Shown here piece by piece: positions 31,001 through 52,900 of a stretch of 64,000 bases of DNA. The stretch spans positions 2,947,361-3,011,360 of the forward strand of contig CM074805.1 of NCBI GenBank assembly GCA_037447605.1. Reading direction: 5' to 3'. Positions within the stretch are counted from its first letter, which is position 1. Every line of letters begins with the position of its first letter. The notes under the pieces are model-generated. The model did not search any database. It saw nothing but the letters and a program-made list of their open reading frames with translations, and was not told where the DNA came from. The position numbers and the translations under genes are program-made. The DNA comes from Zygnema circumcarinatum SAG 698-1b. Taxonomy: Eukaryota; Plantae; Zygnematophyceae.

Positions 31001-31837
31001 CAAACTGAAAGGAATGTAACTTATGCCTGCAGAAACTATGTCACTTGAATATGACAACAGAAGACAAATGCGTACATTAGATTCACAGTCTATACCTGCA
31101 GTGCAGTCTCGTCCAACACTGAAGTGAATGAAGAAAGATTCCGCATGTTCTTCTTTCCATCGTTCGCATAAAGCATCTGTGACAAATCAAGTTGTGTCAA
31201 CAGGAACAATCCCTATGCGCAACATTTATGAAAAGCATGATACATGGATCATCAAACGCTACATTCTGGACCGTAATCTGCACAACAGCTCAAAAGGACC
31301 AAAGAAGCTCCGTATGTCCTTAGCTTCCTCGTCCCTGTGGCATATGATGCGTGTTTTCCCATTGGTGCATCACACCACGCAGGTGAAATTTGCGAGAATC
31401 AACTTTCAAATTGAGATGATTACACGCAGAACCCGCGGCTTTTACCAACAGAGGCATGAGTACAGCTGTAAATTGGAGATTCTTTTGCAATAGAACAGTT
31501 TGAGTTTGTTTGTGTTTGTTTGTTGTTTTGTATTTTTTGTTGGAGTTCAGTTAGGGGAAGAGAGCGCTATAGGTTTGCAGTTGAGACGAACAGGGAATGT
31601 ATATTGCTGAACACACCTCCACAATCTCATACGTTGCTCGAGGCAAACATATTAAGTCATAACCTTACACCGGACTCAGTACTGCAACGTAGGGCGTTTG
31701 AAACTCTTAGCTTCTACTCATTGACATTGCAAATGGAGCTGGAAGAACGTTCGAACTAGGAGTAGCACCTGCCAGGTAACAGCCACAGGACTCCGCCATG
31801 GTTGAATGCGGCTGCGCAGCCGTGCGAGCGTGGCCAT
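25024..31837 (-). CDS. IVD: Isovaleryl-CoA dehydrogenase, mitochondrial
   Basis: Exons encode [130 protein letters not shown]. The first exon ([14 protein letters not shown]...) is inferred as a transit peptide. Confidence 0.95.
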
Positions 31838-32058
31838 GGCGCCTGGATGGCGGCCAGGCCTCAGGGCGCAGGCAGGCAGGCTCCGAGGTGCGGCGGGCGC
31901 CAACTGGCCGCCCCCTTCTTCCTTCCCTGCGAGGTCCCGCCGCGGCCATGGCCGTCCAAGGCCGCTCCGCGTCACGGCCTGCCACGTCGGCGCAGGGACC
32001 CTGGGGAAGGCGGGGGCGGGGGCCGCTGCGATTGGAGGATTGGCTGCCAAAAATGACT

Positions 32059-32079: not shown

Positions 32080-32236
32080 GTTGACTCTCATTTGGTCGAC
32101 GCCACGGTGGTCGACGACCGCGGTGATCGTCGTCCGTCCGTCCGTCCGTCCGTCGTGGAGCGGTCGACCGGGTGCAGTGCGCCTGGAGGGAGGAAGGGAA
32201 GAAGACGCTCCTTCCCTGCTGAAGGCTGAAGGCTTC

Positions 32237-34074
32237 ATGGCTGCGCGGAGGCCGGAGGACCGCATGGCGGTAGCCATGGCCCTTCGAAATGTGGAGGTGG
32301 AGCGTGTCGTGGGGCCAGAAGGCGCTCTGTTTGTGCCCATGGGGACCTTTTGGAAGGATCAGGTGATTTTTTTGGATATGGTGGAGTCAATACTTTAAGA
32401 CTTAATACTCAAATAACTGCACACACCCTCCTTTTACGCGCCCTTGTACAAAAATAAACCAAGAAATGACGGCGTTTTATTAGATGATGCTTTTTAATCT
32501 CTTCGTTTTGGTGTTTTTCTGTTTTGTCACCTTTAAATCTGTTTCTGCACACGGGCTGTCGCAATTTCTTGCTTAGGCTTACGAAATACAGGCGATACTG
32601 TAGCCTCGCCGAGTCCCTTCGTATGCTTGTGTTTCAAAGGCCGGTTCTGTCGAGGGTCCTACTCTAGACTTCTAGAGTTTGAGTCTGGCAGGTGTATGGA
32701 ACATTTGATGTGAAGCACAAGTGCCCCATTGAAATCTGGAACGTTAGTTGGCAACACACTGACTGACAGGCTTAACATCATATGTTTGGAAGCCGGCCTG
32801 CCTCACCTTTTCCCACTCACGTCGTCATCTTTTGTCTATGCACACTTGTTTCATTGAAGAGGCCTGCCGAGAATATGTAAGCCGTTGTTTCTTTTTTGGA
32901 TCTTCAGTGTTCTCGCTTTGTTTCTCCCATGCTGACTATACAGGCAGTTGCCTTGTTTTTATATGGATGAAAGGTGGTGGTTATACACCTTCTACGACGG
33001 TTTGGGTGACGTCTTTGCCGTGGAGGAGCAATGGATATCTCGCGGGCGATTCCATACCTCCTCCAAGCTGGTGTTCGTGTAGTGGGCATAGGTGCGCTTC
33101 TTGGGGGAAAACGCCATCGCTTTGTCTGTTTACAATGTGCTTCAATGGATAAGAGGAGCTTGTGAAGGTCTCCGTGAGGAACTGCTGCATATGTCCTTTC
33201 AGTCTTGTTCCTAAAAGTAATTCTAAAGCTTCTGAATTTACTGAGATTGCCTCTGATCGGGACTCTACGGTTGGTCCATCACCGTGCAAATGATGGAAAA
33301 GGGTTTTTGGTACTTGACATTGAGATGATCTTGTGCTTGCCCTATGCAGGTCTTGAGACTCTTGGTGTAGAGGATTTTGTCGAGGGTGGATTCTGGAAAG
33401 GGGAGCTGTATATCGACAACGACAAGAAGGCATATAACGCCCTGTTGTTGAAATCGGTCGGCATTTGGGGAGCCATCTCACAGCTTATGTTAAATCGAAA
33501 AGTGAAAGCTGCACTAGCGCGTACCAAAACTGTTTCTGGCAATTTGGCGGGGGATGGCCTGTAAGTCACTTTCGCTTTCTTGCGCGCAATGGAAAGGAGA
33601 AAGGAAATATCAAGCGGATGGAGAGGATGCAGGACATCCTAATGTGTCATTTTTCGTTGTACTATTCTTGATACTACATAATCCTATGCTTTGTAGATGC
33701 CGTTTCAGACTGCATGTCCAACAGCCGAGCTTACAAGATGCATCATAAAGAAACTAATGACCCATCCTCATTTTTCTGTCAACCAAGGTCAACATGAGTT
33801 TTCGGCTGAAGTTTCAAAAGTCCGTAGTGCCTCTCTCAAACACCCCCATGCTGTTCGGGTGCTGGGTGGTTGCAGCCAACTTGGAGCCACGTTTGTTATG
33901 GAGGCGGGAGGGGCGACATTGTTGGACTATCGTCAGCAGAACTTCGCTGACCATCCTTCGCCGGAGCTTCTCTTGGAGACTTGTGGACTGCCTTCAACCC
34001 TCCTCCGCGAATCAATTGCCCAAGCTGTCAATGAGACTGAATGCGACGAGGATGTCTGTCGTACCGATCCATAG
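32237..34074 (+). CDS. SELENOU: PRXL2B/SELENOU-family thioredoxin-fold protein, predicted selenoprotein (217 aa, Sec54, UxxC). Exons 32237-32362, 32974-33091, 33350-33560, 33876-34074
   Basis: Spliced product ...GTFWKDQ/VVVIHLLRRFG[TGA]RLCRGGAMDISRAIPYLLQAGVRVVGIG/LETLGVEDFVEGGFWKGELYIDNDKKAY...SGNLAGDGL/QLGATFVMEAGG...FADHP. Total 654 nt, consistent splice phases, one internal TGA at the first Cys of the family CxxC motif, and a SECIS downstream. Confidence 0.88.
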
Positions 34075-34214
34075 ATGTTTCCAATCGAGAATGTCCGCCG
34101 CGGTCCAAGGAAAAAAATCGCATGGGCAGTTCAATTCTACGTGCCTTCTCATTGTATAGCATATGGAGGATGATCAAACGAGTATCTGGGATTCCCTGCA
34201 CCGGCAGTGCTTGA

Positions 34215-34288
34215 CAACCTGCATCAAACATGATGTCCCTTTTGGAAAATGCGCAAGCAGAACAAAAGCGACTGAAGTAGTGTGGTTG
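34215..34288 (+). promoter_or_regulatory. Type II eukaryotic SECIS element in the 3' UTR
   Basis: ATGA at 34230-34233, AAAA 12 nt later, 3' TGAA at 34273-34276. Helix II GTCCCTTTTG/CAAAAGCGAC (9 of 10 pairs), mini-helix TGC-GCAA-GCA, helix I CAACC/GGTTG. Confidence 0.85.
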
Positions 34289-34624
34289 CTGAGAGCTATC
34301 ACGTAGCTGTTGCTTGTCAAGACTGCTCAACGTAGTATAAAGCGCCGGTGACGCAAATTCCAATCATTCGTATTATCTGGCAGCTGTGCTGTTGTTCATG
34401 TTCGTCTTGCAAAGTGGAATGAGCGATTGTGGTGTGTGTGCATGACTTTCTGTGCAAGATGGGAACACTATTGTTCTTTTTCTTTTTTTCCCTCTGCCCA
34501 AGGGAAAGCAGTTAAAAAGCTCGTAGTTGGATTTTGGGTTGGAGCGGTCGGTCTGCCTCTACGGTTGAACTGGCCTCGCCATCCTTCTTGCCGGGGACGC
34601 GCTTCTTCGTATATGCAGACATTA

Positions 34625-34921
34625 GGGGGAGTCAGACCTTGACCATCGCCAAATCAATTTCGTAAGGCTGTCGGGCGAATTAAGCATTGGCTACGTACGC
34701 ATTTCGGTACGGCTGGGCTCAGCGAAGCCGCGGATCCCGAGCCGGAATTCGTACACGAACGAAGTGACTTTTAGTATAAGGAATTCGGGAATTTCGTAAG
34801 CGATGGTCAAGGACTGACTCCCCCTGTACACAACCGTAGCGAAATGCGTACCTAGCCAATGCTTAATTCACCCGACAGGCTTACGAAATTGATTTGGCGA
34901 TGGTCAAGGTCTGACTCCCCC
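34625..34921. mobile_element. MITE with about 90-bp TIRs and TA flanks
   Basis: GGGGGAGTCAGACCTTGACCATCGCCAAATCAATTTCGTAAG... at the left end and its reverse complement at the right; TA at 34623-34624 and 34922-34923. Confidence 0.85.
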
Positions 34922-49919: not shown

Positions 49920-52900
49920 TCAGATTTCCTCCAGATCCTCCTCTTCCCCTTTTCTTCCTGCTTGCTCCTTCCAGAAAAGTAGTTGCTTCCTCAGTTTTTG
50001 AATCTCTCGTGTTTGCACATTGCGTGAGGCATCATTGGTAATCGATCGGACACGAGTGGCGTAGCTGCACTCAGATAACAGCGGCTTCACAGATTAGTGC
50101 GGCTCCTTTTGTCAAGTTGGAACGTCAATCGTCAATCTTTGCTAAGGTACAGCTGCAGAAATGCGCACACTAAAACGCAAGGTTCTTTCACTTTCCTCTC
50201 TCAGCAATAAACGTAACGAGGTGCAACACCAAACTCACCTTAAAGAATTGTGCGTTTCGTCCAGGTTGGACTCTGCTGGCGATATATTGACAAACATAAG
50301 TGTCTTGGCATTGCCTCCCAATGAATCACTCATCAGCATCGTCAGCTTGTGATTGCGGTAGGGAATGTGAGGATCATCCTGAGCGAGCGCACTGATAACA
50401 TCACCTAGAGCCGAGAGCGACTTATTGATTGACTGTGCCTCTTTCAGCTGCTCTCCCGTGCTGCCCGACTTTTTGATCCGCTCTGATCCCGCAAGGTCCA
50501 CAAAGCTCAGCTGCACAAACACCATACCAGAATTTCCAGCTCACAAACATGCGCCTGATTGCAATAAACCAATCCATACCCCATAGGCACAGCGACAGCT
50601 CTGAGACCAAGGCATTTCAACATATCCCTTGCCTCAACTGCTGGCATGCAGACCACTAAACTTGTGGATTTGCTCATCTTCCTGATTCGTCAAGGCCCCC
50701 GCAAATTAGTGTTTGCTAAGGCGAAGTTTACCTTGCCCTTCAAAAGGGTTTGCGTCTGGTAGTTAGTAGCCTCAATGATGATCGAAAGAATGAGATGGGA
50801 GCGTGAACTCTCCGCATTCATGTTGGTTCCTGCTGTCACTCTGCGCTCCATACCCTTCTCTACAATGGTCTGAAGCTCCTCCAGCTTCTCCACTGAGATG
50901 ATAGTCGCGTTTTCCACAACCACCATTCCCTGAACCGAAAAAAGACATAATTTCAATATGTACCTTTTCAGGCACGGACAGTGTCACGAACATTAGAGAT
51001 GCCCTAAAACATGGCAGCTTGCAATCGGATGCTCAGAGATGTGATAAACCAATGACAGGTACTTCGCTCATACAGAAGTCAAGTATGCCAACCAGCCGAC
51101 AACACAGTTCGCCCATTCCAAACAGACAGGAGATCTCACCTTGATGTCTTTTTTTATCTCTAACTTCTTCTTTGCTGCGCCCTTCGGAACCAGGAGGTCT
51201 TGAAGATTGTCTTGGTAAAGCTCCAACATGTATACCTGAATTAACCTCTCACGAAGCACAAACGAAATCAGGACCATACTCTAATGCAATGACAGTAGCA
51301 CATTTACATTCCTCCACCGTGCATTAAGATTCCGAGGACCTATGATGTTATCGAAAGACGAGGATTGCAGTCACTTGTCGTGTCAAACAAGAATAAACAA
51401 CATCTGTACAAGGACTCCACTGAATGAAAACTTACTGTCGAGGTAAGCAATGCGCATTCTACAGACATTGAAAAAGTACACATCGGGAGCTCACAAAGTA
51501 AAGGTCATTCCATTTCAGCCATTACACTTTCCTTAACGGATTTATTCAATTGCCGCCTCGATGTAGGCAGGAGAACTGCAAGCATGCCCCGCTTTCTTCA
51601 TAACGATCCTTCGAGGCTCAAAATCATGCACAACACTTTCCGTCCGAAACTTTTCGCCCAACAAAAGCATGGCTGCTCCTACATGTGCAAGAGAGTGGTG
51701 GCAACCAACCTTAAGAGCAAACGAGATTTTGCCCGAGTCCCTGTCCAAACAGCGGAACAGCTCTTGCATGGCGCGGGCAGTAAGGCCCTCATTCCCCGGT
51801 GCACCGTAAATGGTGTATGTCTTTCCCGACCCCGTCTGTCCGTATGCAAAAATGCATACGTTATAGCCATCAATGGCAGACTGCACCAAATACTGCACAG
51901 TACATCACCAAAAGACTGAATTAGGTGCGAAACATGTGATTCAACTAAATCATAATAAAAAATAAATTCACGTCCCAAAATGAAATGGCATGCAAAGTCA
52001 GCTTTGTGATCCGCTCAAATTGGGTACTGGTCCCACCCAGACAGATAAGTAGTTTTTCCTAAAATGTGTCCAGTCGGAAAAAAAAAGAAGCCATTTCCGG
52101 TTGTGCAATTCCTCACCTTCGTGTCTTCAAACACTTCCTCCTGAGATGCTCGCTCATCAAATACATGGTCAAATTGATGCTGTTTGGGCTTTTCTCCATC
52201 CTTCCATGGGTGCACCATGGTGAACTCGTCTGGTGAGGAAATGACATTCTTTTGATTCTCCACGATCTCTTTCTCGCTGAGGGGCCGAGATCGTGCGTAC
52301 ACTCTGATTTTACCTTTCATGTCTTCCATCATATTAAAGTAGCGCTTGCGAAGCAACTGCTCGTCCATGTACAGCCTTTCCAGCTCTGCTATTTGGTCGC
52401 TCTGCTTCTGTATGACCTCAGCTGCGACTGTGTTTTTCCGTTCCATATCCTATGCACCATCGTCCCGCCCCACGAAAACTTAAGAACAGTCAGTCTCAAA
52501 AGCCAAGCCTTTGCAGAGCTAGCTGCCGTTCTTCAGAAGAAGAAGCACCAAACGAGAAATTTACGCCTTTCTGACAAAAAATAAATGCAAAGGGTGCACC
52601 TTTGCACGGTGCTACATATGGTTTTGTCTTCATACCGTGTACAAAGCGGTCCATAAAGCCGCGACATGCCAAATAGAGTATACGGGGAAAACTCTTTATG
52701 CATGTATTTTACCAAGCAACAATAGCAATGTACTTTCCAACCCTCACCTCTTTCAGTTCACGAAGTTCTTCAAGTTCTTTAATAAGATCATCAATATGCT
52801 CCATTTGGTGTGTTTTCTCCGCCAGTTCTGCTTCCAGCATGGTGATGTGCTTGCTCTGCTCCTCAGCTTTTCTCTCTGCTGCTTCTACTCGGTTTGCCAT

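What the first reader, a model, noticed from the sequence alone, without database searches (positions are those of the whole stretch)
34215..34288. Canonical type II SECIS in the 3' UTR, 140 nt after the stop codon
Seen: CAACC-T-GCAT-CAAAC-ATGAT-GTCCCTTTTG-G-AAAA-TGC-GCAA-GCA-GAA-CAAAAGCGAC-TGAA-GTA-GTGT-GGTTG. This folds into helix I (CAACC/GGTTG plus GCAT/GTGT with G-U pairs), an internal loop and the non-Watson-Crick core UGAU/UGAA with tandem G.A/A.G pairs. Above that are a 10-bp helix II with one C-C mismatch, unpaired AAAA 12 nt after ATGA, and an apical mini-helix closed by a GNRA (GCAA) tetraloop. Established: this is the architecture of eukaryotic form 2 SECIS elements bound by SBP2. 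Inference: it directs Sec insertion at 33007. It is independent support that the TGA is neither an error nor decay.
Basis: partly seen in the sequence, partly recalled or inferred. Interest (0 to 1): 0.92.

Follow-up and report, generated by a model that had tools for sequence, protein, structure and literature searches.

The report
Genuine SECIS element of algal selenoprotein U
This RNA hairpin is almost certainly a working selenocysteine-insertion signal in the 3' UTR of an expressed selenoprotein U (peroxiredoxin-like 2) gene of a Closterium-like green alga. It is a correct catch, but it is an ordinary example of a well-known element.

Summary

- **In the mRNA:** spliced RNA contigs from four public runs confirm a 4-exon gene. 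They keep the TGA at 33007 and carry the 3' UTR to about 34398.
- **Gene family:** it belongs to the SELENOU/PRXL2 family (PF13911). The TGA sits in RRFG-U-RLCR, where homologues have either TGA or Cys.
- **Conservation:** a related alga's mRNA (L001) has the same TGA and a homologous hairpin 187 nt after its stop. That block is the only significant similarity between the two 3' UTRs. Half the helix II pairs differ yet still pair, three by changes on both sides.
- **Independent model:** a covariance model built only from four homologues' elements, not from the window, finds 34216-34289 as the sole significant hit in 128 kb (26.2 bits, E about 0.002).
- **Rfam:** its SECIS models give no hit here, but they also miss the hairpins in all 12 Sec-type homologue loci tested. 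That negative is therefore uninformative.

SELENOU is among the most widespread algal selenoproteins, and selenoproteins are documented in Zygnematophyceae. This scan has already reported other SECIS and selenoprotein genes elsewhere in this genome. It is a new member of a known kind, of modest interest.

The parts
32237..32362 (+). Exon 1 coding part of the SELENOU/PRXL2 gene. The ATG is at 32237 or 32264. The 5' UTR reaches at least 32161.
   Evidence: Spliced contigs begin at 32161-32232. The joint 32362/32974 has GT..AG ends in 3 runs. The translation MAVAMALRNVEVERVVGPEG...FWKDQ matches homologue N-termini.
32974..33091 (+). Exon 2, with the in-frame TGA at 33007-33009 in VVVIHLLRRFG-U-RLCRGGAM.
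   Evidence: RNA contigs cover it with no differing letters. Homologues have TGA or TGT/TGC at the same position in RRFG[U/C]xxCR.
33350..33560 (+). Exon 3, the core of the AhpC-TSA_2 domain.
   Evidence: PF13911, E 2.3e-8. Joints 33091/33350 and 33560/33876 appear in all 4 runs.
33876..34074 (+). Exon 4 coding part, ending in the stop TAG at 34072-34074.
   Evidence: Translation. It aligns with homologues, including the C-terminal Cys pair.
34075..34398 (+). 3' UTR, about 324 nt.
   Evidence: Contig pieces starting at 33876 run on to 34324, 34372, 34397 and 34398. Depth is zero at 34410-34480.
34215..34224 (+). SECIS helix I, 5' strand (CAACC, bulged T, GCAT).
   Evidence: MFE fold. With flanks, the helix extends outward to about 34206/34298.
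34230..34234 (+). SECIS core, 5' side: AUGA plus U.
   Evidence: Sequence. The G.A/A.G positions are invariant in all 6 aligned elements.
34235..34244 (+). Helix II, 5' strand.
   Evidence: It pairs with 34263-72. All 9 model pairs of helix II show changes on both sides among homologues.
34245..34262 (+). Apical part: G, unpaired AAAA, mini-helix UGC/GCA with a GCAA loop, and the 3' bulge GAA.
   Evidence: 34241-34263 is 20/23 identical to L001 1395-1417 and is the only significant similarity between the two 3' UTRs.
34263..34272 (+). Helix II, 3' strand.
34273..34276 (+). SECIS core, 3' side: UGAA (the GA of the tandem sheared pairs).
34280..34288 (+). Helix I, 3' strand (GUGU GGUUG).

Best explanation
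The hairpin at 34215-34288 is a eukaryotic form 2 SECIS element in the 3' UTR of an expressed four-exon gene for selenoprotein U (peroxiredoxin-like 2 / prostamide-PGF-synthase-like, PF13911).

**Shown here**
- The mRNA contains both the UGA at 33007 and the hairpin, which begins 632 nt downstream of the UGA in the spliced RNA.
- The UGA occupies the first position of the UxxC/CxxC redox motif.
- The reading frame after the UGA is under purifying selection.
- The hairpin is conserved with compensatory changes.

**Inferred from established SECIS biology**
- The AUGA/GA core forms tandem sheared G.A pairs, giving a kink-turn.
- SECIS-binding protein 2 binds that core and recruits eEFSec with Sec-tRNA(Sec) to the ribosome.
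- The UGA is then read as selenocysteine rather than stop, giving a 208-217 aa thiol/selenol oxidoreductase.
For: - **Structure and position:**
  - The structure and motif spacing are exactly as described, and it is the MFE fold.
  - It is the only [AG]UGA pattern hit in the window. About 0.002 or fewer are expected by chance in the 3' UTR.
- **Transcript:**
  - Spliced contigs in 4 runs from 3 studies confirm all three GT..AG introns.
  - Exon depth is about 100-550, against 0-17 in introns.
  - The TGA is unchanged in the RNA.
  - One 909-nt contig joins 32232 through 34324, so the UGA and the SECIS sit on one assembled contig. The 3' ends lie at about 34398.
- **Gene family:**
  - Exon 3 hits PF13911.
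  - 11 distinct metagenomic or transcriptomic homologues have TGA at this position and many others have Cys, all in RRFG[U/C]xxCR.
- **Selection:** against the co-orthologues L001 and L006, pN after the Sec codon is 0.24 while pS is saturated at 0.70-0.80. The Sec codons align.
- **Orthologue hairpin:**
  - L001 carries a homologous hairpin 187 nt after its stop and folds the same way.
  - Helix II differs at 5 of 10 pairs yet still pairs: C-G to U-A, U-A to A-U, U-A to C-G, and the C-C mismatch becomes G-U.
  - The apical block is 20/23 identical and is the only significant 3' UTR similarity (0 of 300 shuffles).
- **Independent covariance model:**
  - R1 was built only from L001, L005, L014 and L024.
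  - It scores window 34216-34289 (+) at 26.2 bits, E 0.0017. The next hit is 11.2 bits, E 6.9.
  - It finds nothing in the Cys-type loci.
- **Pair counts on 6 elements:** the covariation score is 0.61, against 0.34 in shuffles (0 of 500) and 0.13-0.22 for slid partners.
- **Tree:** the window protein groups with the two Sec-type algal sequences (SH-aLRT 94).
Against: - Rfam 15 SECIS models give no hit at gathering or at E<=10. They also miss all 12 Sec-type homologue loci tested.
- The thermodynamic signal is modest (z -2.1).
- The 3-bp mini-helix has no covariation between the window and L001, because it is identical in both.
- R1 has only 4 seed sequences and a shortened calibration, so its E-value is rough. 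One seed, L001, is a close co-orthologue.
- The runs are held as assembler contigs, not reads. The exact poly(A) site and the strand are therefore not seen.
- No protein-level evidence of Sec insertion exists here.
Confidence: 0.9

Rival explanations
1. It is a chance hairpin. The TGA is a true stop or a sequencing or assembly error, and the 3' UTR stem-loop merely resembles a SECIS.
For: The loose pattern occurs 0.74 times per 128 kb in shuffled sequence. Rfam gives no hit.
Against: - The TGA is identical in RNA contigs of 4 runs.
- It is shared by co-orthologues and many homologues at the Cys position.
- The frame after it is under purifying selection.
- The hairpin is the only conserved block of the 3' UTR, and its helix changes are compensatory.
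- An independent covariance model finds it uniquely.
Confidence: 0.02
2. It is a relic SECIS in a gene that is losing selenocysteine. The element and the TGA persist, but Sec insertion is inefficient or absent and the mRNA mostly yields a 44-residue truncated peptide.
For: - Land plants, close relatives of this alga, lost Sec entirely.
- Later-diverging Zygnematophyceae were reported with 0-2 selenoproteins (PMC6627142).
- Closterium carries a Cys paralogue (P0100, P0104).
Against: - The mRNA is abundant, with even depth across exons, although the UGA lies upstream of two exon junctions. Such an mRNA would be a nonsense-mediated-decay target if the UGA were read as stop (the decay argument is inference).
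- pN/pS after the UGA is as low as before it.
- Unchecked scan notes report other selenoprotein genes and an eEFSec gene in the same genome.
Confidence: 0.05
3. It is a conserved 3' UTR kink-turn hairpin with a different job, such as mRNA stability, localisation or binding of an L7Ae-family protein, and is unrelated to UGA recoding.
For: Kink-turn motifs bind several proteins. Conservation by itself does not specify function.
Against: - The element has the full SECIS signature: AUGA, helix II of SECIS length, unpaired A-run at the canonical distance, and GA.
- SECIS-like hairpins occur in the 3' UTRs of TGA-containing homologues.
- R1 finds none in Cys-type homologue loci.
Confidence: 0.03

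Closest known systems
Eukaryotic SECIS element, form 2 (type II), as in most animal and algal selenoprotein mRNAs (Rfam RF00031 SECIS_1 family concept; SECISearch3 definition)
   Same: - It lies in a 3' UTR downstream of an in-frame UGA.
- It has helix I, an internal loop, an AUGA/GA non-Watson-Crick core, and a 10-position helix II.
- The unpaired A-run lies 12 nt after AUGA.
- An extra apical mini-helix is present.
   Different: - It does not reach any reportable score with Rfam's model.
- The mini-helix is only 3 bp, closed by a GNRA-type tetraloop.
- The U of AUGA faces an A rather than the more usual U.
SECIS of the co-orthologous algal SELENOU mRNA L001 (Logan contigs of SRR8128904-08, protein P0002)
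   Same: - The architecture is the same, with an identical 45-nt span from UGA to GA.
- The apical block (GGAAxAUGCGxAAGCAGAAC) is nearly identical.
- It sits at a similar distance after the stop, 187 nt against 140 nt.
   Different: - Helix II differs at 5 of 10 pairs, with pairing kept. L001 has no mismatch but four G-U pairs.
- The internal loop is more asymmetric in L001, and the 3' core is GGAA rather than UGAA.
SELENOU / peroxiredoxin-like 2 (PRXL2A/B/C; prostamide/prostaglandin F synthase) family, Sec forms in fish, birds and many algae
   Same: It has a PF13911 domain, the UxxC motif in RRFGUxxCR, a length of about 210 aa, and Sec/Cys interchange among homologues.
   Different: This is a streptophyte-alga member. 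Its nearest named relatives are Cys-type proteins of Closterium sp. NIES-65/68, about 54% identical and therefore paralogues. Land-plant relatives are all Cys-type.

Membership tests
Eukaryotic SECIS element (form 2) | It lies in the 3' UTR of an mRNA that has an in-frame UGA. | tested here: met
   Spliced RNA contigs carry the UGA at 33007 and extend to 34324-34398, past the element.
Eukaryotic SECIS element (form 2) | A core quartet with AUGA on the 5' side and GA on the 3' side (tandem G.A/A.G). | tested here: met
   ATGA is at 34230-33 and TGAA at 34273-76. The G.A and A.G positions are invariant in 6 aligned elements.
Eukaryotic SECIS element (form 2) | A helix II of about 9-12 bp above the core, kept by base-pair covariation. 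| tested here: met
   There are 10 positions and 9 pairs. Three pairs change compensatorily against L001. Covariation is 0.61 against 0.34 in shuffles, 0 of 500.
Eukaryotic SECIS element (form 2) | An unpaired AA(R) motif about 10-13 nt after AUGA. | tested here: met
   AAAA is at 34246-49, 12 nt after AUGA. L001 has AAGA at the same place.
Eukaryotic SECIS element (form 2) | An additional apical helix III beyond the A-containing loop. This distinguishes form 2 from form 1. | tested here: met
   A 3-bp UGC/GCA stem with a GCAA loop is in the MFE fold of both the window and L001. Homologues have 4-6 bp mini-helices of other sequence at this place. Support is by prediction only.
Eukaryotic SECIS element (form 2) | Helix I below an internal loop. 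| tested here: met
   There are 9 pairs, 34215-24 with 34280-88, extended outward when flanks are included.
Eukaryotic SECIS element (form 2) | It reaches the curated covariance-model threshold (Rfam SECIS_1). | tested here: not met
   There is no hit at gathering or at E<=10. The same is true for 12 Sec-type homologue loci, so the model is insensitive here. An independent model, R1, gives 26.2 bits and E 0.0017. SECISearch3 itself was not available.
Eukaryotic SECIS element (form 2) | It binds SBP2 and supports Sec insertion at UGA. | not testable with these tools
   This needs a reporter assay, an EMSA or 75Se labelling.
SELENOU / PRXL2 (PF13911) | An AhpC-TSA_2 thioredoxin-like domain. | tested here: met
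   Exon 3 hits PF13911 at E 2.3e-8, above the cut-off. Homologues are named prostamide/prostaglandin F synthase.
SELENOU / PRXL2 (PF13911) | Sec or Cys at the first position of the UxxC/CxxC redox motif. | tested here: met
   RRFG-U-RLCR aligns with RRFG[U/C]xxCR in 30 loci.
SELENOU / PRXL2 (PF13911) | A coding frame conserved downstream of the UGA. | tested here: met
   Identity is 62-65% over 162-163 codons after Sec. pN is 0.24 against a saturated pS.

The most novel reading that the evidence does not exclude
The Closterium-like lineage keeps a Sec-type SELENOU, complete with SECIS, beside a Cys-type paralogue, while all land-plant relatives are Cys-type. The locus may therefore be a living snapshot of the Sec-to-Cys replacement that came before the loss of the Sec machinery in land plants. 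In addition, the nearly invariant apical block (A-run, UGC-GNAA-GCA, GAA bulge) across saturated divergence may be a lineage-specific contact for the streptophyte SBP2.
Probability: 0.15. Interest if true: 0.45.

Novelty: new member of a known kind. Interest (0 to 1): 0.3.

Why it matters
- **Gene model:** the finding corrects the model. A gene caller that treats TGA as stop would truncate or mis-splice this gene. I did not see this gene's product in the protein searches, only the Cys paralogues of Closterium.
- **Sec decoding near land plants:** it adds genome-level and transcript-level evidence that a desmid-type alga still uses selenocysteine. Desmids belong to the sister group of land plants. 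A 2019 survey (PMC6627142) left this open for later-diverging Zygnematophyceae until genomes became available.
- **Method:** Rfam's SECIS models missed every SELENOU SECIS candidate tested here. Rfam-negative results should therefore not be used to dismiss algal SECIS candidates.
- **Otherwise it is ordinary:** SELENOU is one of the most widespread algal selenoproteins (PMC7539508), and the element is canonical.

Tried and rejected
- **Rfam:** the whole window at gathering, 34100-34400 at E<=10, and homologue loci gave no SECIS hit anywhere. I rejected this as a discriminating test.
- **Word-index search with P0002:** The search for homologous proteins found only one further relative. An alignment query was needed.
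- **P0003:** it is not on record for contig look-up.
- **MAFFT alignments:** alignments of 5-11 SECIS candidates of different geometry were misaligned. I used only the four elements with an identical 45-nt core span, which gave an ungapped alignment as the model seed.
- **Reach of R1:** with default filters it recovered only L010 beyond its seeds and the window. The candidates in L012, L013, L016/17, L035 and L037 rest on the pattern scan alone.
- **L005/L006 candidate:** it has a GUGA core, and its MFE fold prefers a competing 11-bp helix. It is less certain, although it was used as one of the four seeds.
- **L009 and L036:** no SECIS-like hairpin was found. L027 has only 17 nt of 3' UTR.
- **18S-like stretch:** an Rfam scan of 34400-34900 gave no rRNA hit.
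- **tRNA-Sec:** no tRNA genes were found in the window.
- **Species of the related alga:** I could not identify the species behind SRR8128903-08.

Full report
**Observation**

- Helix I: CAACC, bulged T and GCAT, pairing with GTGT and GGTTG.
- Internal loops: CAAAC on the 5' side and GTA on the 3' side.
- Core: ATGA plus T at 34230-34, opposite TGAA at 34273-76.
- Helix II: ten positions, 34235-44 with 34263-72, with one C-C mismatch.
- Apical part: G, then AAAA 12 nt after ATGA, a UGC/GCA mini-helix closed by GCAA, and a GAA bulge.

RNAfold gives this same structure as the minimum-energy fold (-19.4 kcal/mol, z -2.1). With flanks, helix I extends further outward. The stop codon TAG is at 34072-74, so the stated 140-nt distance is right.

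**Chance**

I wrote a SECISearch-like pattern: [AG]UGA, a helix II of at least 9 positions with at most one mismatch, AA 9-13 nt downstream, GA, and a helix I of at least 4 pairs.
- It hits only this site on both strands of the 64-kb window. The one other hit, on the minus strand, has UUGA rather than [AG]UGA.
- Dinucleotide shuffles give 0.74 such hits per 128 kb, and 0.06 at this element's quality.
- The motif alone is therefore not remarkable in 64 kb. The expectation inside the 324-nt sense-strand 3' UTR of a gene with an in-frame UGA is about 0.002 or less.

**The gene and its transcript**

Translation and Logan contigs of four public runs from three studies give a four-exon gene:
- Exon 1 runs to 32362, with the ATG at 32237 or 32264.
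- Exon 2 is 32974-33091.
- Exon 3 is 33350-33560.
- Exon 4 is 33876 to the stop at 34074.

All three introns are GT..AG and are spliced out in contigs of depth about 100-550. Intron depth is 0-17, so these are RNA-derived contigs.

No letter differs from the window, so the TGA at 33007 is present in the RNA. One 909-nt contig joins 32232 through to 34324. Other contig pieces beginning at 33876 end at 34372, 34397 and 34398, and depth is zero at 34410-34480. The SECIS therefore lies inside the mRNA. In the spliced RNA it begins 632 nt after the UGA and ends about 110 nt before the 3' end.

**Family**

- Exon 3 matches PF13911 (AhpC-TSA_2) above its cut-off.
- Homologues are named prostamide/prostaglandin F synthase, that is peroxiredoxin-like 2 or SELENOU.
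- The TGA sits in VVVIHLLRRFG-U-RLCRGGAM.
- A scan of 37 fetched loci shows the same RRFG[U/C]xxCR motif in 36 of them. About a dozen distinct loci have TGA and the rest have Cys, including Closterium sp. NIES-65/68 paralogues and land-plant proteins.
- In a quick maximum-likelihood tree, the window protein groups with two Sec-type sequences of a related alga (SH-aLRT 94). They sit next to Cys-type Closterium and Spirogloea-like proteins, and beside a starred all-Cys clade that holds liverwort and fern proteins.

**Orthologous evidence**

P0002 (contigs L001-L004) and P0098 (L005/L006) are spliced mRNAs from runs SRR8128903-08. Both have TGA at the same codon.

Against the window, amino-acid identity after the Sec codon is 62-65%. 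pN is 0.24 while pS is saturated at 0.70-0.80, and the region before the Sec codon behaves the same way. Translation therefore continues through the UGA, and neutral sequence between these species is randomised.

Even so, L001 carries a hairpin 187 nt after its stop with the same geometry and the same MFE architecture. A local alignment of the two 3' UTRs finds a single significant block: window 34241-34263 against L001 1395-1417, 20 of 23 identical, with 0 of 300 shuffles as good.

In helix II, five of ten pairs differ while pairing is kept:
- C-G becomes U-A.
- U-A becomes A-U.
- U-A becomes C-G.
- Two pairs change on one side to G-U.
- The C-C mismatch becomes G-U.

**Covariance-model test**

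Rfam 15 gives no SECIS hit for the window at gathering, nor at E<=10 on 301 bases. Rfam also reports no SECIS in any of 12 loci with TGA-containing homologues. In 11 of those 12, my pattern scan finds a SECIS-like hairpin in the 3' UTR. I conclude that the Rfam models are insensitive to these elements.

I then built a model that excludes the window:
- The seeds were four homologue elements with the same 45-nt core span (L001, L005, L014, L024), aligned without gaps.
- The structure given to the model was the core plus nine pairs of helix II.
- With filters off, over both strands of the window, the only significant hit is 34216-34289 (+), at 26.2 bits and E 0.0017. The next hit is 11.2 bits, E 6.9.
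- Over 24 sources, it adds only the window and L010, both Sec-type, and nothing in Cys-type loci.
- On the resulting six-sequence alignment, all nine helix II pairs show changes on both sides, and the G.A/A.G positions never vary.
- The covariation score is 0.61, against 0.34 for shuffles (0 of 500) and 0.13-0.22 for slid partners.

Three caveats apply. There are only four seeds, one seed is a close co-orthologue, and the E-values come from a shortened calibration.

**Mechanism**

- Shown: the UGA and the hairpin are on one expressed mRNA, the frame is conserved through the UGA, and the hairpin is conserved with compensation.
- Inferred from established SECIS biology: the AUGA/GA core forms a kink-turn that SBP2 binds, SBP2 recruits eEFSec with Sec-tRNA(Sec), and the UGA is read as Sec in the UxxC redox centre.
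- Unchecked notes from this scan report Sec-type GPX, SelT and SelH genes and an eEFSec gene elsewhere in the same genome. I did not test these.

**Comparison and novelty**

The element meets every structural criterion of a form 2 SECIS that I could test. The curated Rfam score is the only failure.

SELENOU is among the four most widely distributed Sec proteins in algae (PMC7539508). Selenoproteins were found in 15 of 40 Zygnematophyceae transcriptomes, with Desmidiales reported at 0-2 and genome data awaited (PMC6627142). I found no paper treating Closterium selenoproteins specifically.

This is therefore a new member of a known kind. It is a correct and useful annotation of modest interest.

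**Verdict**

My confidence that this is a functional SECIS serving the UGA at 33007 is about 0.9.

Noticed in passing
window 34497-34610 (+): Just beyond the mRNA's 3' end there is a stretch beginning GCAGTTAAAAAGCTCGTAGTTGGATTTTGGGTTGG. From memory it resembles the conserved 18S rRNA segment leading into the V4 region, as if a roughly 100-nt rDNA fragment were inserted in a non-rDNA locus. Rfam at E<=1 gave no rRNA hit. I deliberately left it out of read laying.
   Followed up: partly
window 31800-31940: A separate, well-expressed transcript (depth 125-150 in two runs, on contigs of 1.1-1.6 kb) ends at about 31940, upstream of the SELENOU gene. It is probably the neighbouring gene's end.
   Followed up: no
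window 52736-52772 (-): This is the only other hit of the loose SECIS pattern. It has UUGA instead of [AG]UGA and only a 4-bp helix I, which fits the chance rate of 0.74 per 128 kb.
   Followed up: partly
window 32363-32973, 33092-33349, 33561-33875: Contigs covering the introns have low depth (about 2-17, against 100-550 on exons) in all runs. This indicates a small share of unspliced pre-mRNA or DNA carry-over.
   Followed up: no
L005 758-805 / L006 871-918: The second Sec-type paralogue of the related alga has a SECIS candidate with a GUGA core and a 5-bp UUGCC/GGCAA mini-helix. Its MFE fold prefers a competing 11-bp helix (UGAAACUGCUC with GAGCAGUUUCG) that would disrupt the core.
   Followed up: partly
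P0001 (901 aa) and P0012 (577 aa), annotated proteins of another genome: These are Cys-type PRXL2 sequences fused by gene prediction to an alpha/beta-hydrolase-like protein. P0001 also holds four repeats of the LDHLGxDEFVDGGYWKG exon-like segment. This suggests tandem exon duplication or a mis-assembled gene model.
   Followed up: no
window 34036-34062 (protein C-terminus, ECDEDVC): A Cys pair spaced 3-4 residues apart, near the C-terminus, recurs in most homologues (CGELC, CDDVAC, CTDVC, CKEEC). It may be a second redox motif of this family.
   Followed up: no
L012, L013, L014, L024 SECIS candidates: Several protist SELENOU SECIS candidates share an AAAUUGC...GCAAU-type apical mini-helix. They lie 200-640 nt after the stop, much further than in the algal genes here.
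   Followed up: no
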